Source of the DNA: Scyliorhinus canicula
Lineage: Eukaryota
Length of the DNA stretch: 64,000 bases
NCBI RefSeq assembly: GCF_902713615.1
Contig: NC_052151.1
Span: 33,220,429 to 33,284,428, forward strand
Direction: 5' to 3'
Positions 3,846 to 64,000 of this stretch are shown here, piece after piece (the first letter of the stretch is position 1; each line of letters opens with the position of its first letter). The translations under genes were made by a program, and so were the position numbers. The notes beneath the pieces are model-generated. The model was not told where the DNA came from. It made no database searches and was given only the letters and a program-made list of their open reading frames with translations.

Positions 3846-5171
3846 CATAAGACCATAAGACATAGGAGCAGAATTAGGCCACTTGGCCCATCGAGTCTAC
3901 TCCGCCATTCAATCATGGCTGATATTTTCTCATCCCCATTCTCCTGCCTTCTCCCCATAACCCTTGATCCCATTATTAATCAAGAACCTAACTATCTCTG
4001 TCTTAAAGACATTCAGTGAATTGGCCTCCACAGCCTTCTGCGGCAAAGAGTTCCACAGATTCACCACCCTCTGGCTGAAGAAATCCCTCCTCATCTCTGT
4101 TTTAAAAGATCGTCTCTTTAGTCTGAGATGGTGTCCTCTGGTTCTAGTTTTTCCTACAAATGGAAACATCCTCTCCATGTCCACTCTATCCAGGCCTCGC
4201 AGTATCCTGTACGTTTCAATAAGATTCCCTCTCATCCTTCTAAACTCCAACGAGTACGGACCCAGAGTTCTCAAACCTTCTCTATACAACAAGTTCTTCA
4301 TTCCAGGGATCATTCTTGTGAACCTTCTCTGGACCCTTTCCAAGGCCAGCACATCCTTCCTTAGATATGAGGCCCAAAACTGCTCACAATACTCCAAATG
4401 GGGTCAGACCAGAGCCTTATACAGCCTCAGAAGAACATCCCTGGTCTTGTATTCGAGCCCTCTTGACATGAATGCTAACATTGCATTTGCCTTCTTAACT
4501 GCCGACTGAACCTGCACAATAACCTTAAGAGAATTGTGAACAAGGACTGCCAAGTCCCTTTGTGCTTCTGCTTTCCGACGCATTTCCCCATTTAGAAAAT
4601 AGTCTGTGCCTAAATTCCTCCTTCCAAAGTGCACAACCTCACACTTTTCCACATTGTATTTCATTTGCCACTCCATTGCCCACTCTCCTAGCTTGTCCAA
4701 GTCCTTCTGCAGCCCCCTTGCTTCCTCAATACTATCTGTCCCTCTACAGATCTTTGTGTCAACAATGCCTTCAGTACCTTCTTCCAGATCATTAATGTAT
4801 ATTGTAAAAAGTTGTGGTCCCAGCACAGACCCCTGAGGCTCACCACTAGTCACTGACTGCCATCCTGAAAAAGATCCCTTTATCCCCACTCTCTGCCTTC
4901 TGCCAGTCAACCAATCCTCTATCCATGCCAGGATCTTACCCTTAACACCATGGGCTCTTAACTTATTTAACAGTCTCCTATGCGGCACCTTGTCAAAGGC
5001 CTTCTGGAAATCTAAATAAATCACGTCCACTGGTTCTCCTTTGTCTAACTTGCTTGTTACCTCCTCAAAGAACTCTAACAGATTTGTCAGACATGACCTC
5101 TTCTTGACGAAGCCGTGCTGACTCAGTCCTATTTTATCATGCACTTCCAAGTGCTTCGCGATCTCATCTTT
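3846..5171 (-). mobile_element. CR1 (HER1-like) LINE, 3' part; decayed ORF2 reverse transcriptase
   Basis: ORFs 3930-4397 and 4404-5213 contain QHGF..RSCLTNL, YLDFQKAFDKVPH and PQGSVLGP; (TCTTATG)n 3' tail; continues at 11262. Confidence 0.95.
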
Positions 5172-5516
5172 TTTTTTTAAATAATTTTTATTGAAATTTT
5201 TCGATACAAACATTTACCCCTACTACATTTTAAATTATAACACAACAAATCCCCCCCTGGAAAATCCTCCCCACGCCCTCCCCCGCGCGCACCCCCCCCC
5301 ACCCTCTCCCCCCCCCCCCCCCCCCCCCGCGCTACCAGTCTAGCAACCAAACCGTTTTTCCCTTTCTGCCGATGGCCTCGGGCAGTCATTGCCCGCGACC
5401 CCCCGCTGACGTGCTCCCTTCGTTGCTATCCCCCCCCCTCCCTTCCCCCCCCCCCCTCCCTTCCCCCCCCCCCCCCCCCCTTCTCCCCGGGTTGCTGCTG
5501 TTTCGGCCTCCAGTTC

Positions 5517-8500
5517 CTATCTCTGATCCAGAAAGTCAAGGAAGGGCTGCCACCGCCGGAAGAACCCCTGTACCGACCCTCTCAGGGCGAATTTGATTCT
5601 TTCCAATTGGATGAAGCTTGCCATGTCGTTTAACCAGGTGTTAACACTTGGTGGCCTTGTGTCCCTCCACTGAATCAAGATCCTTCTCCGAGCTACCAAG
5701 GACGCAAAGGCCAATATTCCGGCCTCCCCTGCCTCCTGTACTCCTGGCTCCACCCCAACCCCAAAAATCGCTAGCCCCCACCCTGGTTTGACCCTGGTTC
5801 CCACCACTCTCGATACCGTCCCCGCCACCCCCTCCCAGAACTCTTCCAGTGCCGGGCACATCCAGAACATATGTACATGGTTCGCAGGGCTTCCCGAACA
5901 CCTAACACACCTGTCCTCACCCCCGAAGAACCGACTCATCCTAGTCCCCGTCATATGGGCTCTGTGCAGCACCTTAAATTGGATGAGGCCCAACCTTGCG
6001 CACGACGACGACGAATTGACCCTCTCTAAGGCATCCGCCCATGTCCCATCTTCTATCTGCTCTCCCAGCTCCGCTTCCCACTTGTCTTTCAGCTCCTCTA
6101 TCGATACCTCCTCCACCTCCTGCATTATTTTGTAGATGTCCGAGACCTTCCCTTCTCCGACCCAGACCCCTGACAGCACCCTATCACTCACCCCTCTATC
6201 GGGAAGCAAGGAAAATCCTTCCACCTGTCGTCTGGCAAATGCCTTCACCTGCAGGTATCTAAACGTGTTCCCCGGGGGGAGCTCAAATTTCTCCTCCAGC
6301 TCTCCCAGGCTCGCAAACCTCCCCTCTATGAACATGTCCCTCAGTTGCCTGATGCCCGCCCTGTGCCAGCTCTGGAATCCCCCGCCAGTGTTCCCCGGGA
6401 CAAATCTGTGGTTCCCTCTCAGTGGCGCCGCCATCAGACCCCCCACTTCCCCCCTGTGTCGCCTCCACTGCCCCCAGATTTTAAGGGTGGCCGCCACTAC
6501 CGGACTCGTGGTATACCTTGTGGGGGGGAGCGGCCATGGTGCCGTTACTAGCGCCCCCAGGCTTGTATTGCCGCAGGACGCCCTCTCCATACGTTTCCAA
6601 GCTGCCCCCTCCCCCTCCATCACCCACTTGCGCACCATCGATGCGTTCGCCGCCCAGTAGTATCCGGAAAGATTGGGTAGCGCTAATCCTCCACTGTCCC
6701 TACTCCGTTCCAAGAAAATCCTTCTCACTCTAGGGGTGCCATGTGCCCACACATAGCCCATAATGCTGCTAGTTACCTTCTTGAAGAAGGCCCTGGGGAG
6801 AAAGATGGGCAAGCACTGGAACAGAAACAAGAACCTCGGGAGGACCGTCATTTTGACTGACTGCACCCTCCCTGCTAGCGACAGCGGTACCATGTCCCAC
6901 CTCTTGAACTCCTCCTCCATCTGCTCCACCAGCCTTGAAAAGTTCAGCTTGTGGAGGGTCCCCCAGTTCCTTGCCACCTGCACCCCCAAGTACCTGAAGC
7001 TCTTTACTGCTCTCTTAAAGGGGAGCCGCCCAATTCCCTCCCCCTGATCTCCCGGGTGTATCACAAAGACCTCACTTTTACCCACATTTAATTTATATCC
7101 CGAAAAGTCCCCAAACTCCGCTAGTATTTCCATTACCTCCGGCATTCCCCCTTCCGGGTCCGCCACATATAACAACAAATCATCCGCATAGAGTGATACC
7201 CGATGTTCCTCCCCTCCCCTTGTCAGTCCTCTCCACCCCCCTGAACCCCTCAGTGCCATCGCCAACGGTTCGATCGCTAATGCAAATAGTAAGGGGGATA
7301 GGGGGCATCCCTGCCTGGTACCTCGATGGAGCCCAAAATACTCTGACCTCCTCCCGTTTGTAACCACACTCGCCATCGGGGCCGAATACAGCAGCTTCAC
7401 CCACTTGATAAATCCCTCCCCAAACCCAAACCGTTCCAGCGTCTCCCACAGGTATTCCCACTCCACCCTATCGAATGCCTTCTCCGCATCCAGTGCTACC
7501 ACTATCTCAGCCTCCCCCTCCACTGCTGGCATCATAATCACATTCAACAGTCTCCGGACATTTGTGTTAAGTTGTCGTCCCTTTACGAACCCCGTCTGGT
7601 CCTCATGGATTACCCCTGGCACACAATCCTCTATTCTGGTTGCCAGGACCTTTGCCAACAGTTTGGCATCTACATTCAAGAGGGAGATAGGCCTGTAGGA
7701 CCCGCACTGTACAGGGTCTTTGTCCCGCTTCAGGATCAAGGAGATCAGGGCCTGTGACATTGTCGGGGGCAGAACCCCCCCCTCTCGCGCCTCATTGAAG
7801 GCTCGCACCAGCACTGGACCCACCAAGTCCACATACTTCTTATAAAATTCCACCGGGAACCCATCCGGCCCCGGCGCCTTCCCCGCCTGCATCTGGCCTA
7901 TCCCTTTAACTAGCTCCTGCAGCTCTATCGGCGCCCCAGCCCCTCCACCCGTTCCTCCTGGACCTTTGGGAACCTCAATCTATCGAGGAAGTTCTCCATT
8001 CCCCCCCTCCTCCTGGGCGGCTCAGACCGGTACAATTCCCTGTAGAAATCCCTGAAGACCCCGTTCACCTCTTGCCCCTTCTGCACTACGTTCCCTCCCT
8101 TCTCTCTCACTCCCCCAATCTCTCTGGCTGCATCTCGCTTGCGCAGCTGGTGTGCTAGCATCCTGCTCGCCTTTTCCCCGTACTCATAGACCGCGCCCTG
8201 TGCCCTTCTCCATTGCGTCTCCGCCTTCCTAGTGGTCAGTAGGTCAAACTGGGCCTGTAAACTGCGCCGCTCCCTCAACAGCCCCTCCTCTGGTGTCTCC
8301 GCATATCTCCTGTCCACTTCTATAAGTTCCCCCACCAGTCTCTCCCTCTCCTGCCTCTCCTTCCTTTCTCTGTGTGCCCTTATGGAGATCAGCTCTCCTC
8401 TGATCACTGCTTTCAGGGCCTCCCAGACCACCCCCACCTTCACCTCGCCCGTGTCGTTCGTGCCCAGATATCTCTCAATGCCCTTCCGGACCCTTCCGCA

Positions 8501-9310
8501 CACCTCATCGTCCGCCAGCAGCCCCACATCCAGGCGCCACAACGGGCGCTGGTCCCGTGCTTCCCCCAGTTCTACCTCTACCCAGTGTGGTGCATGGTCC
8601 GAAATCGCAATGGCCGAGTACTCCGTGTCCTGCACTCTCGAAATCAGCCCCCTGCTCAGTACAAAAAAGTCTATTCTGGAGTACACCCTGTGGACGTGGG
8701 AGAAAAAAGAATACTCCCTCGCCCTTGGCCTGCCAAATCTCCAAGGGTCTACCCCCCCCATCTGCTCCATGAACCCCCTTAGCACCTCTGCCGCTGCCGG
8801 CCTCCTATTCGTCCTGGAACTCGATCTGTCCAGCCCAGGGTCGAGCACTGTATTGAAGTCCCCCCCCATGATCAGGCCCCCTGCCTCCAGACCCGGAATG
8901 AGGCCCAACAGGCGCCTCATAAAACCCGCGTCATCCCAATTCGGGGCATACACATTCACCAGCACCACATTCTCTCCCTGCAGCCTACCCTTCACCATCA
9001 CGTACCTACCCTCCTTATCTGCTACCACCTGCGCCGCCACGAACGACACCCTCTTTCCCACCAAAATCGCCACCCCCCGGTTCTTTGCGTCCAAGCCTGA
9101 GTGGAACACCTGTCCCACCCACCCCCTTCTCAGGCGTACCTGGTCTACTACTCTCAAGTGAGTCTCCTGCAACATTGCCACATCCGCCTGCAGTCCCTTT
9201 AGGTGTGAAAAAACCCTTGATCTCTTGACCGGCCCATTCAGCCCCCTCACGTTCCAAGTAATCAACCGGGTCGCGGAGCGACCCGTCCCTTTCCCCTGTC
9301 TATTAGCCAT
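5517..9310 (-). CDS. L1 ORF2p (APE endonuclease, reverse transcriptase, CCHC) split by a 1-bp frameshift at 7934-7937
   Basis: ITWNVRGL, LQETH, GGDFN, SRIDF, SDH (EN); KAPGPDG, GTRQGCPLSP, LYADD (RT); CVRC..HVHMFWMC. Adding one G gives a 1264-aa ORF from the ATG at 9310. Confidence 0.93.
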
Positions 9311-10266
9311 GTCCTGTCCCCTGTTCGCCCCGGGTCGACCCTCCCCTTCTGACCCGTTCCCCATGGCGATGGCCCCCCCCCCTCTCTCCTCCCGTTCTTC
9401 CCTTCCCGTCCTCGGCCTTTCCAGCAGCAACCCGATATCCCCCCCTAACCCCCCTTCCCCCCCCCCCCCCCCCCCCCCCCCCCTGGCTAGGACCCCTCCT
9501 AGCCGCGGTGTATCCACCATCGTACTCCCGAGAGTCAGCTGGTTTTCGCTGACCCGGCTGCCCCTGCCACACTTCGACTCCTCCCGATGTGGGGGGGGAG
9601 GGGCCTCCCCCCCCCCTTGCCATCCCTCTCTGACCCCGCTTCAGCGCGGGAAAAGCCGCCATTGCTGGCCACACCCCACTCTTCTCTCCTCCCCCTTCCT
9701 CCGTCCCGCGCGCGGGAAACAGGGGAAAGCCCGCGCTTTCGCCCGGCCACACCCTACCCCGCCATCTTCAATTCCACCCCCGTCCCCATCCAAGCCCATA
9801 AATAAGAAGCCCCCTTAAAACGAGAGGAAGAAAAAAGAGAAAAAGAAAACACGCATAACCAACTTGCACCCCCCCCGTCCCGCCTCCCCAACTTAACAAT
9901 ATAACAATATAAATAACAAATCTCAAATAAATACATAAATACATAACTATGCCTGCATAACTAAATGACTACCCAATAATAACGTATTTAACCATCACCC
10001 TCCATCGAACAGAACAGTAACCATAATCCTTAAAGAACAGATCAAAAAACAGTAAAAAAGCCCCCCTACAACAACAATAATTAAGGGAAGTTGGCAACGG
10101 GAAGAGACACACAAAAAGGAACAAAGAAACCCCCCATAACACAAGTTTCAAAGAAACCAAACGATCCATCAACTTTAACCAAGTTCCGACCTGGCCTAAG
10201 AAAGACATGGGCCACTTGATCAGTCAAGGGTACTCGGGCGGCCTCGACCGCCGGCGTTCCCAAGTT

Positions 10267-18796: not shown

Positions 18797-18807
18797 ACAT
18801 TTTGGAT

Positions 18808-20017
18808 TAGACCATAAGACATAGGAGCAGAAATAGGCCACTTGGCCCTTCGAATCAGCTCCGCCATTCAATCATGGCTGATATGTTTCTCATTCCCATT
18901 CTCCTGCCTTCTCCCCATAACCCCTGATCCCCTTATTAATCAAGAACCTATCTATCTCTGTCTTAAAGACACTCAGTGATTTGGCCTCCATAGCCTTCTG
19001 CGGCAAAGAGTTTCACAGATTCACCACCCTCTGGCTGAAGAAATTCCTCCTCATCTCAGTTTTAAAGGATCGTCCCTTTAGTCTGAGATTGTGTCATCTG
19101 GTTCTAGTTTTTCCTACAAGTGGAAACATCCTCTCCACGTCCACTCTATCCAGGCCTCGCTGTATACTGTAAGTTTAAATAAGATCCCCTCTCATCCTTC
19201 TAAACTCCAACGAGTACAGACCCAGAGGCCTCAATTGTTCCTCATACGACAAGCTTTTCATTCCAATATCATTCTTGTGAACCTCCTCTGGACCCTTTCC
19301 AAGGCCAGCACATCCTTCCATAGTTACAGGCCCAAAACTGATCACAATACTCCAAATGGGGTCTGACCAGAGCCTCAGAGATACATCCCTGGTCTTGTAT
19401 TCTAGCCTTCTCGACATAAATGTCAACATTGCATTTGCCTTCCTAACTGTCGACTGAACATGCACGTTAACCTTAAGAGAATTGTGAACAAGGACTCCCA
19501 AGTCCCTTTGTGCTTCTGATTTCCTAAGCATCTCCCCATTTAGAAAATAATCTATGCCTCTATTTCTCCTTCTAAAGTGCATAACCTCACACTTTTCCAC
19601 ATTGTATTCCATCTGCCACTTCATTGCCCACTCTCCTAGCCTGTCCAAGTCCTTCTGCAGCTCCCAGCTGCTTCACCAATACTACCTGTCCCTCTACAGA
19701 TCTTTGTATCATCTGCAAACTTAGCAACAGTGCCTACAGTTCCTTCCTCCAGATCATTAATGTATATTGTGAAAAATTGTGGCCCCAGCACTAACCCCTG
19801 AGGCACACCACTAGTTGCTGACTGCCATGCTGAAAAAGACCCCTTTATCCCCACTCTCTGCTTTCTGCCAGTCAGCCAATCCTCTATCCATGCCAGGATC
19901 TTACCCTTAACACCATGGGCTCTTAACATATTTAGCAGGCTCCCAACTTCTAACTTGTCTAACTTCCTTGTTACTTCCTCAAAGAACTCTAACAGATTTG
20001 TCAGACATGACCTCCCT
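18808..20017 (-). mobile_element. CR1 LINE fragment, same family as 3846-5171
   Basis: CCATAAGACATAGG tail; RT peptides GVPQG..GP and KFADDTK; several frameshifts. Confidence 0.93.
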
Positions 20018-47494: not shown

Positions 47495-48025
47495 ATTGGA
47501 TTTGGATTTGTTTATTGTCAATTGCACCGAGGTATAGTGAAAAGTATTATTCTGTGAGCAGATCAAACAGATCATTTAGACATGAAAAGAAAAGAAAATA
47601 CATAAAAAGGCAACACAAGGGTCCACAATATAAATGCATAGACGCCGGCATTGGGTGAAGCATACAGGAGTGTAGTATTGATCAGGTCAGTCCATAAAGG
47701 GGTAGTTTAGGAGTCTGGTAACAGCGGGAAGAAGTTGTTTTTGAGTCTGTTCGTGCGTGTTCTCAGACTTCTGTGTCTCCTGCCCGATGGAAGAAGTCGG
47801 AAGAGTGAGTAAGCCGGGTGGGAGGAGTCTTTGATTATGCTGCCCACTTTCCCCAGGCAGCGGGAGGTGTAGATGGAATCAATGTACGGGAGGCAGGTTC
47901 GTGTGATGGACTGGGCGGTGTTCACGACTCTCTGAGATTTCTTGCAGTCCTGGGCCGAGCAGTTGCCATACCAGGCTGTGATGCAGCCAGATAGGATGCT
48001 TTCTATAGTGCATCTGTAAAATTTG
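47495..48025 (-). mobile_element. Rex1/Babar-type LINE 3' fragment
   Basis: C-terminal peptide SHPAYSLFRLLPSGRRHRSLRTRTNRLKNNFFP; end TGACAATAAACAAATCCAAATCC. Confidence 0.85.
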
Positions 48026-49141: not shown

Positions 49142-52100
49142 TTTGCTTGTTAAACAGCAGAAAACTCGACAGGTGATGGAAGCAGAGGGTTCAAGTGGTG
49201 GGGGACATGTGAGTGGGTGGGGGAGGGGGTTGATGTCCAATTCCTGGGAAATTAACTTGTTAGCTTTACTGTTTCCCTTTCTTGTCACTGTAGCCTGGAT
49301 TTTCTGGAATGTTGGAACATAAATAAAGCGTAATAATATTTGTTGGGCCAACATAGCCTGACAAAACCAATTGGAATGATGCCCCCCCCCCCCCCCCCCC
49401 CCCCCGCATCTTGGTTATTTTACTCTGTGATCCCTGAGAAAAATCCAAGAAAAGGATAAGATTTACCATGCAGTTCAGTCTTTGGTGTATGTCTCTGTTT
49501 ACTAACAGTCCGCCTCGGTTCCCCTGTGCAATGTCGGAGCTCGGTTTATAAATTGCTCTTGAATGTTGGTTGAACACATGCCAGTTTGACAAGAATAACT
49601 TGGACATTATTTCCCACCATCGCTGCGAGATCACAGAAGAGAATCCCGCCACTTTAGCGCAGAATAAAGTGTAGTCGTTAGGCTATAATAACAGGGCCAC
49701 ATCAGTTCTTTACGTTCAAAGAGTGATGTGAGAACCACACGTAGCTACTGGAGCTACGATTGAAGAGGGAATCACATAAGCACTCGAAAGCGGAAAACCT
49801 GAAAGGAGGCAGGGAAATGGGCCAGATGCTTCCGACCCTGCTGATATTTCCCAGATTAAATCAGATCGCTCTGATTTGGAGCTCTCAATAGTGCCCACGG
49901 GACAGACACTTGCTTCTGCGCAAGGTTTTCGCCGATTCTACCACATACCTCGAGATAACACTCCTATCAGCAAGACAAGGTCAAAGGATGCTGCTCAATC
50001 CCTCACTGAGAACTTCCATTCCAAACATTGCACTTTTGCTGAAGGCAAGATTTGAGTTTGTTTTCACTCTCCCACTGCCCGGTGGCCACTTTAACTGCCC
50101 AGTGGCCACTTTCACTGCCCGGTGGCCACTTTCACTGCCCGGTGGCCACTCTCACTGCCCGGTCGCCACTCGTAGTGTCCGGTCGCCACTCGCACTGCCC
50201 GGTGGCCACTCTCACTGCCCGGTGGCCACTCCCACTGCCCGGTGGCCATTCCCACTGCCCGGTGGCCACTCTCACTGCCCGGTGGCCACTCCACTGTCCG
50301 GTGGCCACTCTCAATATACAGTGGCCACTCCCACTGCCCGGTGGCCACTCTCACTACCCAGTGGCCACGCCCGCTGCCCGGTGGCCACTCTCACTACCCA
50401 GTCGCCACTCCCACTGCCCGGTGGCCACTTTCACCGCCCGGTGGCTCCTCCCACTGCCCGGTGACCACTCTCACTGCCCAGTGGTCACTCTCACTGCCCG
50501 GTGGCCACTCTCACTGCCCGGTGGCCGCTCTCACTGCCCGGTGGCCACTCTCACTGCCCGTTGGCCACTCTCACTGCCCGGTGGCTACCCTCACTGCCCG
50601 GTGGCCACCCTCACTGCCCGGTGGCTACTCCCACTGCCCCAGTGGCCACTCCCACTGACCAATGGCCACTTTCATTGCCGGGATGCCACTCCCACTGCCC
50701 GGTGGCCACTTTCACTGCCCGGTGGCCACTCCCACTTCCCGGTGACCGATCCCAGTGCCCGGTGGCCACTCTCACTGCCCGGTGGCCACTCTCACTGCCC
50801 GGTGGCCACTCTCACTGCCCGGTGGCCACTCCCACTGCCCGGTGGCCACTCTCACTGCCCGGTGGCTACTCTCACTGCCCGGTGGCCACTCCCACTGCCC
50901 GGTGGCCACTCCCACTGCCCGGTGGCCACTCTCACTGCCCGGTGGCCTCTCCCACTGCCCGGTGGCCACTCCCACTGCCCGGTGGCCACTCCCACAGCCA
51001 GGTGACCGATCCCAGTGCCCGGTGGCCACTCTCACTGCCCGGTGGCCACTCTCACTGCCCGGTGGCCACTCTCACAGCACGGTGGCCACTCTCACAGCCC
51101 GGTGGCCACTCTCACTGCCCGGTGGCCACTCTCACTGCCCGGTGGCCACTCTCACTGCCCGGTGGCCACTCTCACTGCCCGGTGGCCACTCTCACTGTAG
51201 GGTGGCCACTCCCACTGTCCGGTGGCCACTCCCACTGCCCGGTGGCCACTCTCACTGCCCGGTGGCCACTCTCACTGCCCGGTGGCCACTCCCACTGCCC
51301 GGTGGCCACTCTCACAGCCCGTTGGCCACTCTCACTGCCCGGTGGCTACCCTCACTGCCCGGTGGCCACCCTCACTGCCCGGTGGCCACCCTCACTGCCC
51401 GGTGGCTACTCCCACTGCCCCAGTGGCCACTCCCACTGACCAATGGCCACTTTCATTGCCGGGATGCCACTCCCACTGCCCGGTGGCCACTTTCACTGCC
51501 CGGTGGCCACTCCCACTTCCCGGTGACCGATCCCAGTGCCCGGTGGACACTCTCACTGCCCGGTGGCCACTCTCACTGCCCGGTGGCCACTCCCACTGCC
51601 CGGTGGCCACTCTCACTGCCCGGTGGCCACTCTCACTGCCCGGTGGCCACTCCCACTGCCCGCTGGCCACTCCCACTGCCCGGTGGCCACTCTCACTGCC
51701 CGGTGGCCTCTCCCACTGCCCGGTGGCCACTCCCACTGCCCGGTGGCCACTCCCACAGCCCGGTGGCCACTCTCACTGCACGGTGGCCACTCTCACAGCC
51801 CGGTGGCCACTCTCACTGCCTGGTGGCCACTCTCACTGCAGGGTGGCCACTCCCACTGTCCGGTGGCCACTCTCACTGCCCGGTGGCCACTCTCACTGCC
51901 CGGTGGCCACTCTCACTGCCCGGTGGCCACTCTCACTGCCCGGTGGCCACTCTCACTGCCCGGTGGCCACCCTCACTGCCCCAGTGGCCACTCCCACTTC
52001 CCGGTGACCGATCCCAGTGCCCGGTGGCCACTCTCACTGCCCGGTGGCCACTCCCACTGCCCGGTGGCCACTCCCACTGCCCGGTGGCCACTCTCACTGC

Positions 52101-54987
52101 CCGGTGGCCACTCTCACTGCCCGGTGGCCACTCTCACTGCCCGGTGGCCACTCTCACTGCCCGGTGGCCACTCCCACTGCCCGGTGGCCACTCTCACTGC
52201 CCGGTGGCCACCCTCACTGCCCGGTGGCTACTCCCACTGCCCCAGTGGCCACTCCCACTGACCAATGGCCACTTTCATTGCCGGGTTGCCACTCCCACTG
52301 ACCGGTGGCCACTTTCACTGCCTGGTGGCCACTCCCACTTCCCGGTGACCGATCCCAGTGCCCGGTGGACGCTCAAACTGCCCGGTGGCCACTCTCACTG
52401 CCCGGTGGCCACTCCCACTGACCGGTGGCCACTCTTACTGCCCGGTGGCCACTCTCACTGCCCGGTGGCCACTCCCACAGCCTGGTGGCCACTCTCACTG
52501 CCCGGTGGCCACTCTCACTGCCCGGTGGCCACTCTCACTGCCCGGTGGCCACTCCCACTGACCGGTGGCCACTCTTACTGCCCGGTGGCCACTCTCACTG
52601 CCCGGTGGCCACTCTAACAGCCCGGTGGCCACTCTAACAGCCCGGTGGCCACTCCCACTGCCCGGTGGCCACTCCCACTGCCCGGTGGCCACTCCCACTG
52701 CCCGGTGGCCACTCCCACTGCCCAGTGGCCACTTTCACTGCCCAGTGGCCACTCTCACTGCCCGATGACCATTCTCACTGCCTGGTGGCCAATTTCACTG
52801 CCCTGTGGCCACTCCCACTGCCCAGTGGCCACTTTCACTGCCCAGTGGCCACTCCCACTGCCCAGTGGCCACTATCACTGCCCGATGACCACTCACACTG
52901 CCTGGTGGCCACTTTCACTGCCCAGTGGCCACTCCCACTGCCTGGAAGCCACTCAAACTGCCCGGTGGCCACTCCCACTGCCCGGTGGCCACTCCCACTG
53001 CCCGGTGGCCACTCCCACTGCCCGGTGGCCACTCTCACTGCCTGGAGGCCACTCTCACTGCCCAGTGGCCACACTCACTGCCCGGTGGCCACTTTCACTG
53101 CCCGGTGGCCACTCCCACTTCCCGGTGACCGATCCCAGTGCCTGGTGGCCTCTTTTACTGCCCCGTGGCCACTCCCAATGCCCGGTGGCCACTCCCACTG
53201 CTCGGTGGCTACTCTGACTGCCCGGTGCCACTCTCACTGCCCAGTGGCCACTTTCACTGCCTGGTGGCCACTCCGACTGCCCGGTGGTCACTCTCACTGC
53301 TCGGTGCTCACTCTCAATGCCCAGTGGCCACTCTCACTGCCCAGTGGCCACTCCGACTGCCCGGTGGTCACTCTCACTGCGCGGTGCTCACTCTCACTGC
53401 CCGGTGGCCACTCCGACTGCCCGGTGCTCACTCTCACTGCCCGGTGGCCACTCTCACTGCCCGGTGGCCACTCTCACTGCCCAGTGGCCACTCTCACTGC
53501 CCGGTGACCACTCTCACTGCCTGGAGGCCACTCTCACTACCCGTTGGCCACTCACACTGCCCGGTGGCCACTCTCACTGCCCGGTGGCCACTCTCACTGC
53601 CCGGTGGCCACTCCCACTGCCCGGTGGCCACTCCCACTGCCCGGTGGCCACTCCCACTGCCCGGTGGCCACTTTCACTGCCCGGTGGCCACTCTCAATGC
53701 CCGGTGGCCACTCCCACTGTTCGGTGGCCACTCTCACTTCCCGAAGGCCACTCTCACTTCCCGATGGCCACATTTACTGTCCGGTGGCCACTTTCACTGC
53801 CCAGTGGCCACTCTCAATGCCTGCTGACCAGTCTCACTGCCCGGTGGCCACTCTCACTGCCTGGTGGCCACTCTCACTGCCCGGTGGCCACTCCCACTGC
53901 CTGGTGGCCACTCTCACTGCCCGCTGGCCACTCTCACTGCCCGCTGGCCACTCCCACTGCCTGGAGGCCACTCTCACTGCCCGGTGGCCACTCTCACTGC
54001 CCAGTCGCCACTCCCACAGCCTGGTGGCCACTCCCACTGCCTGGAGGCCATTCTCACTGCCCGGTGGCCACTCTCACTGCTCGGTGGTCACTCTCACTGC
54101 CCAGTGGCCACTCTCCCTGCTCGGTGGCCACTCCGGCTGCCCGGTGGTCACTCTCACTGCCCAGTGCCCACTCTCACTGCCTGGTGGTCACTCTCACTTC
54201 TCGGTGGTCACTCTCAATGCCCGGTGGCCACTCTCACTGCCCGGTGGCCACTCTCACTGTCTGGTGGTCACTCTCACTGCTCGGTGGTCACTCTCACTGC
54301 TCGGTGGTCACTCTCACTGCCCAGTCGCCACTCCCACAGCCTGGTGGTCACTCTCACTGCTCGGTGGTCACTCTCACTGCCCCGTAGCCACACACACTGC
54401 CCAGTGGCCACTCTCCCTGCTCGGTGGCCACTCCGGCTGCCCGGTGGTCACTCTCACTGCCCAGTGCCCACTCTCACTGCCTGGTGGCCACTCCGGCTGC
54501 CCGGTGGCCACTCTCACTGCCCAGTGGCCACTTTCACTGCCTGGTGGTCACTCTCACTGCCCAGTGGCCACTCTCACTGCTCGGTGGCCACTCTGACTGC
54601 CCGGTGCCACTCTCAATGCCCGGTGGCCACTCTCACTGCCCGGTGGCCACTCTCACTGTCTGGTGGCCACTCCGACTGCCCGGTGCCACTCTTACTACCC
54701 AGTGGCCACTCTCACTGCCCAGTGGCCACTCTCACTGCCGGTTGACCACTCTCACTGCCCAGTGGCCACTCCACTGTCCGGTGGCCACTCTCACTGCCCG
54801 TTGGCCACTCTCACTGCCCGGTGGCCACTCTCACTGCCCGGTGGCCACTCTCACTTCCCGGTAGCCACTCTCACTTCCCGGTAGCCACTCTCTCTGCCCG
54901 ATGGCCACATTTACTGCCCGGTGGCCACTCTCACTGCCCAGTGGCCACTCTCACTGCCCGGTGGCCACTCTCACTTCCCGGTGGCCA

Positions 54988-60181: not shown

Positions 60182-60528
60182 GGAGTCAGTGCCGTAGTGG
60201 TATTGTCACTGGGCTCATAATGCAGAGACCCTGGGTAATTTCTGGGGCCCCTGGTTCAAACCCCATCAATGCTGATGGTGAAATTTTAATTTAATAAAAA
60301 TCTGGAATTACAAAATCTAATGATGACCATGAAACCATTGCTGATTGTTGTTAAAAACCCATCTGGTTCATTAATGCTCATAGGAAGGAAGGAAATCTGC
60401 TGTCCTTACCTGGTCTGGCCTACATGTGACTCCTCATGATCCACAGCAATGTGGTTGACTCTTACTGCCACTCAGCTCGAGGGCAATTATGGATGGGCAA
60501 CAAATGCTGCCCTTGCCAGCGATGCCCA
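60182..60528 (+). mobile_element. tRNA-derived SINE with CR1-like tail
   Basis: GTAGTGG...GGTTCAAACCC head; tail GGGCAACAAATGCTG..GCCAGCGATGCCCA matches the LINE end near 23300. Confidence 0.8.
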
Positions 60529-60536
60529 AATACTTG

Positions 60537-60737
60537 GGGTGGCATGGTAGCACAGTGGTTAGCTCTGCTGCTTCACCAGCACCTGGGTCCCAGGTTCGAT
60601 TCCCACTTGGGTCTCTATCTGTGCGGAGTCTGAACCTTCTCCCCGTGTCTGCGTGAGTTTCCTCTGGGTTTCTGAGTGTGACGACTAGACGATTTTCACA
60701 GTAACTTCAGCGCAGTGTTAATAATAAAGATTATTAA
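60537..60737 (+). mobile_element. Degenerate V-SINE with Rex-type tail
   Basis: Head, partial core and TTTTCACAGTAACTTCA. Confidence 0.7.
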
Positions 60738-60759
60738 TATTCTGAAAGAATTTTTAAAA

Positions 60760-61050
60760 TTGGTCCATCGTATCTGCTTGGTTCTCCAAATGAGCATCAT
60801 GGCTTAGCCTGTACTCCTGCACATTGTTTCTATTCAAATAATCATCTAATGCCCTCTTGAATGCCTCGAGTGAAGCTGCTATCACCACATCCCCAGGCAG
60901 TGCACTCCAGACCTCAAACATTTGCTGCGTGAAAATGTACTTTTTCTGTCAGTGGCTTCTTTCGCAAATCAATTTAAATTTATCCCTTCTTGTTTTTGAT
61001 CTTTTTATGAGGGAACAGTTTCTCCCTATCCACTCTGTCCAGCAATGAAC
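60760..61050 (-). mobile_element. Old CR1 fragment (left part of the host of the fold-back unit)
   Basis: AATGCCCTCTTGAATGCCTCG...CTATCCACTCTGTCC; continues at 63517. Confidence 0.65.
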
Positions 61051-61404
61051 TAAGACCATAAGATATAGAAGCAGAATTAGACTAATCGGCCCATCGAGTC
61101 TGCTCCGCCATTCAATCATGGCTGATATTTTCTCATCCCCATTCCCCTGGCTTCTGCCCATAACCCCTGAACCCCTTATTAATCAAGACCCTATCTATCT
61201 CTGCCTTAAAGACACTCAGTGATTTGGCCTCCATAGCCTTCTGCGGTAAAGAGTTCCACAGACTCACCACCCTCTGGCTGAAGAATCCTCTTCATCTCGG
61301 TTTTAAAGGATCGTCCCTCGAAGGGATCATCAAGGCGAACATCTCCCGCACTTCTTCGGATGGTGACGGGAGATCATTGGAAGACCAGGGCAGAATCTTA
61401 CCAA
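61051..61404 (-). repeat. Left arm of a ~355-bp inverted repeat (CR1 3' end 61051-61318, unique 61319-61387, TIR 61388-61404)
   Basis: Reverse complement of 63162-63516, about 90% identical by eye. Confidence 0.93.
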
Positions 61405-61930
61405 AGAAATGGTAAAATGTCAGTTCTGCAGCGAAAAACAGTGCAAATCCCACCGGCAGGGTCGGTGAGAATTCCCACGGAATATCGAGACTCAGAAACA
61501 AAAGATTTTTTTCTCCGTCAATCACGCCGTGCTAATTTGCTCGATTCAGGGAGACGTAATCACTGCAATCACTGGGGAGCCCCGTTTAAATGCCTCCCCA
61601 GCACATGCCTTAGATCCAATAGAGGGGATGCCATCCAGAAAGTCGGCTCCACAATTTTCAGAGGGAGCCCTGACCAGACTACTGGATGGAGCACAGCAGA
61701 GGTGGGACGTTCTGTACCCGCACTCCAGGGTGCGGCCCGCCAGCAAGGTGACCAGACGTACTTGGGCGTGCCATAGCGGCATTAGTTAGTGCCAGCTCAC
61801 TGCAGACGAGGACGGGGCAGCAGTACCCAAAGAGAGTGAACAACCTTCTTTGTGCAGCCAGAGCAGGTCATTGACCCCCAGTCTCTCAATGCAACCCCTC
61901 GCCCATCCCTCGCCCCTCCGAGATAATCTT
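61388..61930 (+). mobile_element. PIF/Harbinger transposon left end
   Basis: TIR GGGCAGAATCTTACC followed by a Myb/SANT-like coding remnant. Confidence 0.75.
61628..61868 (+). pseudogene. Harbinger Myb/SANT-like DNA-binding protein remnant (frameshifted)
   Basis: MPSRKSAPQFSEGALTRLLDGAQQRWDVLYP...RRTWA / AIAALVSASSLQTRTGQQYPKRVNNLLCAAR matches the NAIF1/MSANTD-type pattern; frameshift near 61768. Confidence 0.7.
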
Positions 61931-61964
61931 TCACCACCTCGTGGGTTGCCCACCTGTCACACTC

Positions 61965-62125
61965 TTCCTTTCGAGGATGAAAGTCATGGGTTCAAGCCTG
62001 ACCTCAGAACTTGAGCACGTAGTCGAGGCTAACACACCAGCAGCACTGAGGCAGCACTATACAGCTGGGAGTGAGATCCCCGTCAAAGCTGCTTTTCAGG
62101 TGGATGCAAAGAAATTCATATATAC
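61965..62125 (+). mobile_element. DeuSINE-like head remnant
   Basis: GGGTTCAAGCC..CAGAACTTGAGCAC..GAGGCTAACAC. Confidence 0.45.
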
Positions 62126-62215
62126 AAATAAAAGAGGGTGAGGAAAAGGTCAAAAGGTTACCTGTTCCATGGAGTCAGTCTCATTCAGTCCTGCAACGAG
62201 ACGACATGACCCTCC

Positions 62216-62783
62216 TGTTATGGGAGAGGTGTATTCAGAACCCCAAAATGTATCATGGAGTTCAACCAACCCCCACCTTTAATGGATTGTTGCTTTTGAA
62301 GCACACGGCTTGTTCCCCAGGTGTAGTATTACAATTATGGACACGTAGTTTTTAAAACAAAACAATGTTTATTCCATGAACTCAAATTAACCTTTTAAAT
62401 AAACATTGGATCTCTTAACACCCCTTACTTCAAAGATAACCCCGAAAATAATACACTATCCAATCCTGCAAACTGTTCCTTTACACATCCAAAAGACTTA
62501 ACAAATCCTTCAAATAGAAGCACATTAGATTTACATTCAATACTGAGACCTTTTTACAATTCCGATTTCACCAAAGGATTAAGAGATAGTCCTTCATGGC
62601 AGAGATCACCAGCAATGCAGCTCACAGCCACACCCAAGCTTTCTTCAAACTGAAACTAAAACTCCCAAAAATCAGAAGTGAGCTCAGCTCCCCCCGTGAC
62701 ATTACTTCAGTAATATGATCAGCCTCATTTCTTCAAGGTACATTTCTTAAACATCCAATTCTTAAAGGCACTCTCACATGACA
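62216..62783 (-). mobile_element. Solo LTR (568 bp), probably Gypsy-type
   Basis: TGTTATG...CATGACA inverted termini, 4-bp TSD CTCC, AATAAA on the minus strand. Confidence 0.88.
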
Positions 62784-62826
62784 CTCCCAAAACTCCCCAG
62801 ACACCGGCAGCTGCATAATCTCCCGG

Positions 62827-63160
62827 AATTTGATTTGATTTATTGTCACATGTACTGAAGTACAGTGAAAAGTATTTTTCTGCGGCCAAGGAAACGTACA
62901 CAGTACGTACATAGTAGACAAAAAGAATAATCAACAGGAAACATTGACAAACGGTACATCGACAAAACAGTGATTGGTTACAGTGCGGAACAAGGGGCCA
63001 AACAAAGCAAATACATGAGCAAGAGCAGCATAGGGCATCATGAATAGTGTTCTTACAGGAAATAGATCACTCCGAGGGGGAGTCGTTGAGGAGTCTTGTA
63101 GCTGTGGGGAAGAAGCTGTTCCTATGTCTGAATGTGCGAGTCTTGAGACTTCTGTACACC
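62827..63160 (-). mobile_element. Rex1/Babar-type LINE 3' fragment
   Basis: YRSLKTRTFRHRNSFFPTATRLLN; end CTTTTCACTGTACTTCAGTACATGTGACAATAAA(TCAAA)n. Confidence 0.85.
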
Positions 63161-63161
63161 C

Positions 63162-63516
63162 TTGGTAAGATTCTGCCCTGGTCTTCAAATGATCTCCCGT
63201 CACCATCCGAAGAAGTGCAGGAGATGTTCGCCTTGATGATCCCTTCGAGGGACAATCTTTAAAACAGAAATAAGGAGGAATTTCTTCAGCCAGAGGGTGG
63301 TGAATCTGTGGAACTCTTTACCGCAGAAGGCTGTGGAGGCCAAATCACTGAGTGTCTTTAAGAAAGAGATAGATAGGTTCATGATCAATAAAGGGATCAG
63401 GAGTTGTGTGGAGAAGGCAGGAGAATGGGGATGAGAAAATATCAGCCATGATTGAATGGTGGAGCAGACTCGATGGGCCGAGTGGCCTAATTCTGCTCCT
63501 ATGTCTTATGGTCTTA
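63162..63516 (+). repeat. Right arm of the inverted repeat (TIR 63162-63178, unique 63179-63247, CR1 3' end 63248-63516)
   Basis: Reverse complement of 61051-61404. Confidence 0.93.
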
Positions 63517-64000
63517 TCCAATCTCTCTTCACAGCTAAAACTCTACAGCCCAGACAACATCCTGATAAATCACCTCTGCACCCTTTCCAGGGCTATCACA
63601 TCCTTCCTTTCATGTAGATTCCAGAACTGCGTACAATAATCTGGCCTAACCAATGTTTTATATAGTTCCATCATAACCTCCCTACTCTTAAACTCGATGC
63701 CTCAGCTAATAAAGGCAAGTATACCATATGCCTTCTTAACCACTGTATCCACTTGCTCTGCTACCTTAAGGAACTGGTATACATGCACAGCAAGATCCCT
63801 CTGGCCCTTGGTGCTTCCAGGGTCATATATTCCCTTGCCTTTTTTATTCTGCCCAAGTGCATTACCTCACACTCACCTGGATTGAATTCCAGTTGACACT
63901 AATCAGCCCATCTGACCAGCCTGTCTCCATCCTCCTGTAATCAAAGGCTATCCTCACTATTTACCACCCCATTAATTGTTGTATCGTCCTCAAACCTCAT
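63517..64000 (-). mobile_element. Old CR1 fragment (right part of the host)
   Basis: AACATCCTGATAAATC..CTGCACCCTTTCCAGG..CAGAACTG..TATGCCTTCTTAACCAC. Confidence 0.75.

What the first reader, a model, noticed from the sequence alone, without database searches (positions are those of the whole stretch)
61051..63516. Two-tailed fold-back unit: outward-facing CR1 tails, a shared unknown 69-mer and Harbinger TIRs around a 1.76-kb core
Seen: 61051-61404 and 63162-63516 are inverted copies, about 90% identical by eye. Both CR1 pieces are 5'-truncated at the same base, and both are fused to the same 69-bp non-CR1 sequence (2 differences) and a 17-bp TIR, GGGCAGAATCTTACCAA. They share a variant (GGTAAAGAG) where the copies at 3846 and 18808 have GGCAAAGAG. 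Homology stops exactly at the CR1 3' terminal repeat (TCTTATGGTCTTA) on both sides. The unit interrupts an older CR1 with no TSD and roughly 80-90 bp of host apparently missing. Established: CR1 proteins recognise the 3' tail, and independent 5' truncations rarely coincide. Inference: this is either a non-autonomous element that can be retrotransposed from either strand because both transcripts end in a CR1 tail, a local retrocopy of a TIR-69mer-CR1 chimeric RNA, or a template switch triggered by TIR pairing. A read-through RNA would form ~350 bp of dsRNA.
Basis: partly seen in the sequence, partly recalled or inferred. Interest (0 to 1): 0.75.

Follow-up and report, generated by a model that had tools for sequence, protein, structure and literature searches.

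The report
One-off two-tailed CR1 insertion scar
The inverted pair of CR1 tails is real, but it looks like a single old rearranged insertion inside an older CR1 in this shark genome, probably made when a CR1 reverse transcriptase primed from both broken DNA ends. It is not a mobile family and not a Harbinger transposon.

Summary
Window 61051-61404 and 63162-63516 are inverted copies, 91% alike. Each arm is the last 269 bp of an abundant CR1, including its 3' hairpin and 17-nt tail, joined at the same base to the same 86 bp of non-CR1 sequence. The unit sits in one older CR1 with no target-site duplication and about 70-78 bp of host missing.

- **Harbinger label:** there is no support for it. 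The 17-mer occurs only as the inner tip of the two arms. Its flanks are CCA and TGG, not a TWA duplication, and no transposase or Myb domain was found.
- **Mobile family:** this does not fit. In contigs of three DNA runs the 86-mer has summed depth 3-15, like the unique core, against 10^5-10^6 for the CR1 tail. That means about two copies, both here.
- **Origin of the 86-mer:** it is not the missing host piece, not a detectable continuation of the adjacent L2-like fragment, and not a known small RNA.

My best reading (about 0.45) is one complex CR1-driven insertion. A read-through RNA ending in a truncated CR1 tail was reverse-transcribed from both ends of the break ("dual priming"), with a target deletion. 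A DNA-level inverted duplication is the main rival.

One point is unexplained: the 86-mers differ at 2 of 86 positions and the CR1 parts at 29 of 269. Interest is modest.

The parts
60760..61050 (-). Host: 3' part of an older, diverged CR1 (flank A)
   Evidence: nhmmer with a profile of five window CR1 copies: 61042-60760 matches profile 290-575, E 3e-13. Alignment.
61051..61318 (-). Left arm, CR1 part: the last ~269 bp of an abundant CR1 family, with its 3' terminus abutting flank A
   Evidence: nhmmer 61319-61051 matches profile 365-610, E 2.5e-53. 3' hairpin predicted. Contig depth 4.5e4-1.2e6.
61319..61404 (.).
   Evidence: Differs at 2 of 86 positions from the right copy. Bin depth 3/9/15, i.e. 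low copy. No Rfam, tRNA or special fold. A contig of run X1 spans 61349-61608 with 1 mismatch.
61405..62137 (.). Core, left part: low-copy sequence. 61553-61903 is a low-copy repeat, roughly tens of copies
   Evidence: Depth 0.6-25, and 36-563 for 61553-61903. No match elsewhere in the window. No Pfam hit in six of its longer ORFs.
62138..62824 (.). Core, middle: fragments of high-copy repeats, not classified
   Evidence: Depth 8e3-6.7e5.
62825..63161 (-). Core, right end: 5'-truncated L2-like LINE fragment. Its short-repeat 3' tail lies at 62825 and its truncated end abuts the right 86-mer
   Evidence: Second copy at 47498-47774. Residues 33-58 of the minus-strand ORF match LINE C-terminal proteins, E 5e-6. 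Loose ends at 62839.
63162..63247 (.). Right copy of the 86-nt non-CR1 segment
63248..63516 (+). Right arm, CR1 part: the last 269 bp of the same CR1 family, with its 3' terminus abutting flank C
   Evidence: nhmmer 63248-63519 matches profile 366-613, E 5.5e-60. Hairpin z -3.15. Loose ends at 63257 and 63517.
63517..63937 (-). Host: the more 5' part of the same older CR1 (flank C)
   Evidence: nhmmer 63734-63519 matches profile 3-211, E 6e-34. BLASTN 63937-63514 against positions 692-1133 of the long copy at 3847.

Best explanation
The unit is a single-locus scar of one complex CR1-mediated insertion into an older CR1.

Somewhere in the genome, a read-through transcript of ordinary repeat-rich DNA ended in a 5'-truncated CR1 copy of 269 nt with its hairpin and tail. 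The 86-mer was simply the unique DNA next to that truncated CR1. CR1 reverse transcriptase recognises its own 3' end, so such an RNA can be copied.

At the target, both 3'-OH ends of the break primed on that CR1 tail. This was either a staggered cut about 75 bp apart or a resected double-strand break. One cDNA ran about 2.1 kb and the other only 355 nt. The two cDNAs were then joined inside the insertion, and the roughly 70-78 bp of host between the nicks was lost.

This accounts for the two outward tails, the identical CR1 'truncation', the shared 86-mer, the mosaic core, the missing TSD and the deletion.

Shown: the anatomy, the low copy number, the single host CR1, and that the structure is old. 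Inferred: the RNA template, the priming at both ends, and which arm is the short cDNA.
For: Both outer junctions lie exactly at the canonical CR1 3' terminus, where hundreds of family contigs diverge. Both arms keep the 3' hairpin and the same 17-nt tail.

The arms share one junction to the same 86-mer, so they copy one template.

The flanks are collinear parts of one older CR1, with about 70-78 nt lost and no TSD.

The 86-mer and the left core are low copy, which fits a one-off copy of ordinary genomic sequence.

The CR1 parts of the arms share only one derived variant. They are as far from each other (89.3%) as from unrelated family copies (88.8-91.5%). The arms therefore date from about the time this CR1 fragment was made, not from a much later duplication of an aged insertion.

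Arms at 91% identity cannot be a sequencing fold-back artefact.

Dual priming by two RNAs at the two nicks has been proposed for L1 (PMC2837659, section 11). Stringent 3'-end recognition by CR1-type LINEs is established (PMC3747384).
Against: No source locus was seen, and none could be searched for.

The published dual-priming model predicts a TSD, whereas here there is a deletion.

A single origin predicts equal divergence along the arms. Instead the 86-mers differ at 2/86 and the CR1 parts at 29/269 (Fisher p 0.015). This needs arm-to-arm gene conversion or chance.

Microhomology at the internal junction cannot be judged without the source.

The core could also have grown by later insertions.
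Confidence: 0.45

Rival explanations
1. Two steps at the DNA level. First an ordinary CR1-tailed insertion (core plus one arm). Then a local inverted duplication of 355 bp by break repair or replication template switching (fold-back type), placed at the other end of the insertion.
For: The 86-mer occurs only in the two arms, so one arm may be the template of the other. LINE-associated fold-backs are documented (PMC11702581). Earlier notes on this genome report a template-switch scar and a snapped-back arm (untested here). The same tail length in both arms follows automatically.
Against: A DNA-level copy has no reason to end exactly at the CR1 3' terminus, or to land exactly at the junction between flank A and the earlier insertion. 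A later duplication should leave shared private mutations in the CR1 parts, and only one shared variant is seen. Fold-back copies normally have little or no spacer, and here there are 1757 bp.
Confidence: 0.25
2. Two separate retro-insertions of a rare 355-nt chimeric RNA (86-nt head plus CR1 tail). This would be a very low-copy SINE-like unit whose two copies happened to land head to head 1.76 kb apart.
For: Both arms end inwards at the same base, as full-length copies of one RNA would. The CR1 tail and hairpin are intact enough for recognition.
Against: Copy number is about two, both here. No tRNA, 5S or Rfam-type head was found, and the head folds no better than shuffles. The 1757-bp core between the arms is not host CR1 and would need yet another insertion. 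Two hits in one 75-bp target are very unlikely.
Confidence: 0.1
3. One reading: a two-tailed non-autonomous element that can be retrotransposed from either strand and exists as a family.
For: Both strands would give an RNA ending in a CR1 hairpin plus tail.
Against: Depth of the 86-mer and left core is 3-25, against 10^5-10^6 for the CR1 tail, in three DNA runs of two organisms. No other copy was found in the 64-kb window. One RNA run showed essentially no expression over 61319-62137.
Confidence: 0.05
4. A DNA transposon (Harbinger or another long-TIR element), with the 17-mer or the whole 355 bp as its terminal inverted repeats.
For: There is an inverted repeat at both ends of a 1.8-2.5 kb unit. 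61553-61903 is a low-copy repeat.
Against: There is no TWA or any other direct duplication at either candidate boundary (CCA/TGG at the 17-mer...GAAC/TCCA... at the outer ends). No transposase or Myb domain was found. The termini are canonical CR1 3' ends shared with about 10^5 CR1 copies. The 17-mer has no other copy. The host lost about 75 bp, which cut-and-paste insertion does not cause.
Confidence: 0.04

Closest known systems
Dual priming, a proposed variant of L1 twin priming (Meyer et al. 2010, PMC2837659)
   Same: Two RNAs, or one RNA used twice, are primed at their 3' ends from the two nicked strands. This gives an insertion whose two outer ends are both LINE 3' ends in opposite orientation, joined internally.
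   Different: It was proposed for L1 from loci with only a short 5' poly(T) and with TSDs. Here the LINE is a stringent-type CR1, the second cDNA is 355 nt and fully overlaps the first, the template is a chimeric read-through RNA, and the target shows a ~75-bp deletion instead of a TSD.
Twin priming / 5'-inverted L1 insertions
   Same: The second DNA end primes reverse transcription, producing an inverted segment inside one insertion.
   Different: In twin priming the inverted part comes from an internal, adjacent and non-overlapping region of the RNA, and only one end carries the tail. Here both arms are the same 3'-terminal 355 nt.
LINE-tailed non-autonomous retroposons (SINEs with CR1 tails such as SacSINE1 or TguSINE1; PMC3747384, PMC5729268)
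   Same: A non-LINE 5' part is fused to a CR1 3' end that the CR1 machinery can recognise.
   Different: Those are families with many copies and a pol III head. This junction has about two copies, no recognisable head, and occurs as an inverted pair.
LINE-associated fold-back or inverted duplications (PMC11702581)
   Same: Inverted copies arise at a break that carries reverse-transcribed sequence.
   Different: Those are large chromosomal fold-backs in cell lines with host DNA inverted. Here only the retro-copied 355 nt is inverted and the host flanks stay collinear.

Membership tests
CR1-tailed SINE or non-autonomous retroposon family | Many dispersed copies with different flanks | tested here: not met
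   The 86-mer bin has depth 3/9/15, like the adjacent low-copy core bin 61436-61552 (6/9/25), against 10^5-10^6 for the CR1 tail. There is no further copy in the window.
CR1-tailed SINE or non-autonomous retroposon family | LINE-derived 3' end with recognition hairpin and tail repeats | tested here: met
   Both arms fold into the family's 8-bp stem plus inner stem, followed by a 17-nt tail. nhmmer matches reach the profile end.
CR1-tailed SINE or non-autonomous retroposon family | Small-RNA-derived head (tRNA, 5S, 7SL) with an internal promoter | tested here: not met
   ARAGORN found none. Rfam gave no match at E up to 1. The head fold has z 0.21.
PIF/Harbinger DNA transposon | 3-bp TWA target-site duplication flanking the TIRs | tested here: not met
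   The flanks of the 17-mer are CCA and TGG, which are part of the longer inverted repeat. The outer flanks are not a direct repeat.
PIF/Harbinger DNA transposon | DDE transposase and/or Myb-like gene, or clear derivation from an element that has them | tested here: not met
   No Pfam hit at E up to 1 in six of the longer core ORFs. The ESM Atlas gave no named neighbour. No such domain appeared in nine of the longest window ORFs, 269-791 aa.
PIF/Harbinger DNA transposon | TIR sequence shared with other family copies | tested here: not met
   At up to 3 mismatches the 17-mer occurs only in the two arms. Depth there is low.
Twin-priming 5'-inverted LINE insertion | Inverted and direct parts are adjacent, essentially non-overlapping parts of one RNA, with one tail only | tested here: not met
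   The arms are the same 355 nt, and both carry the tail.
Dual priming (two-ended TPRT) | LINE 3' terminus at both outer junctions, in opposite orientation, inside one target site | tested here: met
   The flanks are one older CR1.
Dual priming (two-ended TPRT) | Target-site duplication, as drawn in the published model | tested here: not met
   There is no TSD, and about 70-78 nt of host is missing. A nick stagger in the opposite sense, or a resected break, would be needed.
Dual priming (two-ended TPRT) | An RNA template carrying the same chimeric junction (a source locus) | not testable with these tools

The most novel reading that the evidence does not exclude
The unit is a very low-copy 'two-tailed' retroposon. 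Because both strands end in a functional CR1 hairpin and tail, either transcript can be mobilised by CR1, and this locus is one of a handful of copies, or the master. The depth data allow at most about one further copy, so this is nearly excluded but not formally.
Probability: 0.05. Interest if true: 0.7.

Novelty: new variant of a known kind. Interest (0 to 1): 0.3.

Why it matters
If the two-ended priming reading is right, this locus is a natural and unusually legible record of a mechanism so far only postulated for L1. Both ends of a LINE-made break would have been extended from the LINE's 3' tail, here by a CR1 that needs its own tail. It would also show a CR1 tail mobilising about 2 kb of unrelated transcript, which bears on why retrocopies are rare but not absent in CR1-dominated genomes.

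As a single old locus with no sign of function or mobility, it does not change any general picture. For annotation, the practical lesson is that identical '5' truncation' plus a shared unknown segment can mark one rearranged insertion and need not mark a new family.

Tried and rejected
(1) **The 86-mer as the host CR1's missing ~75 bp.** The sizes are similar and it looked similar by eye. The alignment score to the matching segment of five CR1 copies equals that of shuffles. nhmmer finds no hit. Depth is 3, against 1.8e3-2.8e4 for the host flanks. Rejected.

(2) **The 86-mer as the continuation of the adjacent L2-like fragment.** The reading frame looked continuous. The DNA score equals shuffles, and so does the protein score. 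A phmmer scan of 1.8 billion proteins aligns real LINE proteins only to residues 33-58, outside the 86-mer. The one hit over residues 6-52 is a low-complexity repeat protein. Unsupported.

(3) **The 86-mer as a small RNA.** No Rfam match, no tRNA and no special fold.

(4) **A Harbinger Myb-like fragment at 61529-61786, recalled from memory.** No Pfam hit and no ESM Atlas lead.

(5) **Other copies elsewhere.**
- An exact-pattern scan of metagenome contigs gave 0 hits. This is uninformative for a shark.
- None of six junction-spanning ORFs is in the protein collection.
- The word search with the ORF at 61295-61525 (minus strand) found nothing.
- The findings index by sequence was blank, which means nothing here.

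(7) **Expression.** One oligo-dT RNA run had essentially no reads over 61319-62137, so there is no verdict on the dsRNA idea.

Full report
**1. What is there**

The repeat finder and BLASTN confirm an inverted repeat. Window 61051-61404 pairs with 63162-63516 at 91.3% over 356 columns, E 6e-143, with 1757 bp between the arms.

Each arm has two parts. The outer 269 bp is the 3' end of an abundant CR1 family.
- Two other copies in the window (3847-4117 and 18802-19077, minus strand) match the arms at 89-92%, but only from 63248 onward. Upstream they continue with sequence shared between the two of them and absent from the arms.
- A profile of five window CR1 copies places the start of homology at 63248 (right) and 61319 (left), and its end at the CR1 terminus.
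- Both arms keep the family's 3' hairpin and a 17-nt tail.

The inner 86 bp (61319-61404 and 63162-63247) is not CR1. The two copies differ at 2 positions.

**2. The host**

The flanks are two collinear pieces of one older, diverged CR1 on the minus strand. 63734-63519 matches profile 3-211 (E 6e-34) and 61042-60760 matches profile 290-575 (E 3e-13). About 70-78 nt are missing and no direct repeat lies at the ends. The whole 2466 bp is therefore an insertion with a target deletion.

**3. Copy number**

I laid Logan contigs of two DNA samples of the source organism, one DNA run of a second organism and one RNA run on 60500-64000 at 85% likeness or more.

| Region | Summed contig depth |
|---|---|
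| CR1 parts of the arms | 4.5e4 to 1.7e6 |
| Bin 61319-61435 (left 86-mer) | 3.0 / 8.8 / 14.7 |
| Adjacent core bin 61436-61552 | 5.8 / 8.9 / 25.4 |
| Single unique contigs in the same runs | 2.3-4.6 |

- The 86-mer therefore exists about twice, both times here, with room for at most about one more copy.
- Loose ends at 63257 carry the canonical upstream CR1 sequence, so ordinary family members run on where the arms switch to the 86-mer.
- Loose ends at 63517 have many different continuations, which marks the family's true 3' terminus.
- A 260-nt contig of run X1 bridges the left inner junction (61349-61608, one mismatch). It may be the source sample, so it is weak independent support.
- No listed piece bridges the right inner junction.
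- Arms that differ by 9% cannot be a read-level fold-back artefact.
- The RNA run had essentially no reads over 61319-62137.

**4. The Harbinger label**

- At up to 3 mismatches the 17-mer occurs only at the inner tips of the two arms.
- Its flanks are CCA and TGG, which are simply the next bases of the longer inverted repeat, not a direct TWA duplication.
- Six of the longer core ORFs have no Pfam hit at E up to 1.
- An ORF that I recalled as Myb-like got no support from Pfam or the ESM Atlas.
- Nine of the longest ORFs (269-791 aa) of the window hold LINE RT and endonuclease domains, and no transposase.

The label is unsupported.

**5. What the 86-mer is not**

- It is not the host's missing piece. 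Scores equal shuffles, nhmmer finds no hit, and depth is three orders of magnitude below that of the host flanks.
- It is not detectably the continuation of the L2-like LINE fragment that abuts it. That fragment is 62825-63161, minus sense, with a second copy at 47498. Residues 33-58 of its ORF match LINE C-termini. The DNA and protein extension tests equal shuffles.
- It is not a tRNA, not an Rfam family, and not unusually structured.

The simplest reading is that it is a scrap of unique DNA that lay next to a truncated CR1 at some source locus.

**6. Age and relatedness of the arms**

In the CR1 part the arms are 89.3% alike. That is no closer than either is to the unrelated copies at 3847 and 18802 (88.8-91.5%).

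Where the arms differ, the odd state is rare in the family at each arm-difference site among the 40 listed rows (for example 61171, 61189, 63272, 63364, 63406 and 63409; 400 further rows were not shown). Each arm has therefore collected about 4.5-5.6% private changes.

The arms were thus made at about the time this CR1 fragment itself was made, not by a much later duplication of an aged insertion.

One point is unexplained. The 86-mers differ at 2/86 and the CR1 parts at 29/269 (Fisher p 0.015). Arm-to-arm gene conversion over the inner ~90 bp, or chance, are the candidates. No single-origin model predicts this difference.

**7. Mechanism**

Three facts need one cause:
- both outer ends are exact CR1 3' termini;
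- both arms copy one chimeric template;
- the whole block sits in one target with a deletion.

Target-primed reverse transcription from both DNA ends on an RNA ending in a CR1 tail explains all three. CR1-type LINEs recognise their own 3' end (PMC3747384), so a second priming would start at the tail. It would not start internally as in L1 twin priming.

This is the 'dual priming' scheme that Meyer et al. postulated for L1 but could not demonstrate (PMC2837659). One cDNA of about 2.1 kb would carry the mosaic core, a copy of ordinary repeat-rich transcript. The other would have stopped after 355 nt. Which arm is the short one cannot be told.

The rival is a DNA-level inverted duplication after an ordinary insertion. 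LINE-linked fold-backs exist (PMC11702581), and earlier notes on this genome report a template-switch scar and a snapped-back arm (I did not test them). That rival does not explain why the copy ends exactly at the CR1 terminus and lands exactly at the older junction.

The family, SINE-like and transposon readings fail on copy number, head and TSD.

**8. Verdict**

The Harbinger and mobile-family readings are rejected. The retrocopy reading is kept and sharpened to two-ended priming, with confidence about 0.45.

This is a one-off, old, apparently silent structure. It is of moderate interest as a possible natural example of dual priming by a stringent LINE.

Limits:
- No whole-genome or cross-species search was possible.

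Noticed in passing
window 63162-63253 versus 63254-63516 (and the mirror positions in the left arm): Divergence between the arms is uneven: 2 differences in the inner 92 bp, then 8 within 63254-63281, and 29 in the 269-bp CR1 part overall (Fisher p 0.015). Arm-to-arm gene conversion or chance are possible causes. This is unexplained.
   Followed up: partly
window 3847-5400 and 5517-9520, minus strand: A 1.55-kb CR1 3' portion with an RT ORF (4404-5213) lies next to a second LINE with long ORFs holding endonuclease (7925-9520) and RT (5517-7892) domains. That element may be nearly intact.
   Followed up: partly
window 60500-60733: A very high-copy repeat (contig depth 3e5-2e6) whose family continues into a tRNA-like B-box sequence at the loose ends. 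It is well represented in the oligo-dT RNA run (about 360-550 reads per bin on each strand). It is probably a SINE fragment.
   Followed up: no
window 62825-63161 and 47498-48020: Two 5'-truncated copies of an L2-like LINE. Its C-terminal ORF motif (…RSL.TRT…NSFFP…LLN) matches fish and shark LINE proteins, and its 3' end is a short tandem repeat.
   Followed up: partly
window 49910-54864, plus strand: A dense stack of overlapping long GTG/TTG-started ORFs on one strand with only spurious Pfam hits. This suggests a compositionally biased or tandem-repeat stretch.
   Followed up: no
window 61436-61903, run X10 (second organism): Contigs of a second organism cover the low-copy core at 85% likeness or more (depth 25-563). 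The unit, or its source sequence, may therefore predate the split of the two species.
   Followed up: no
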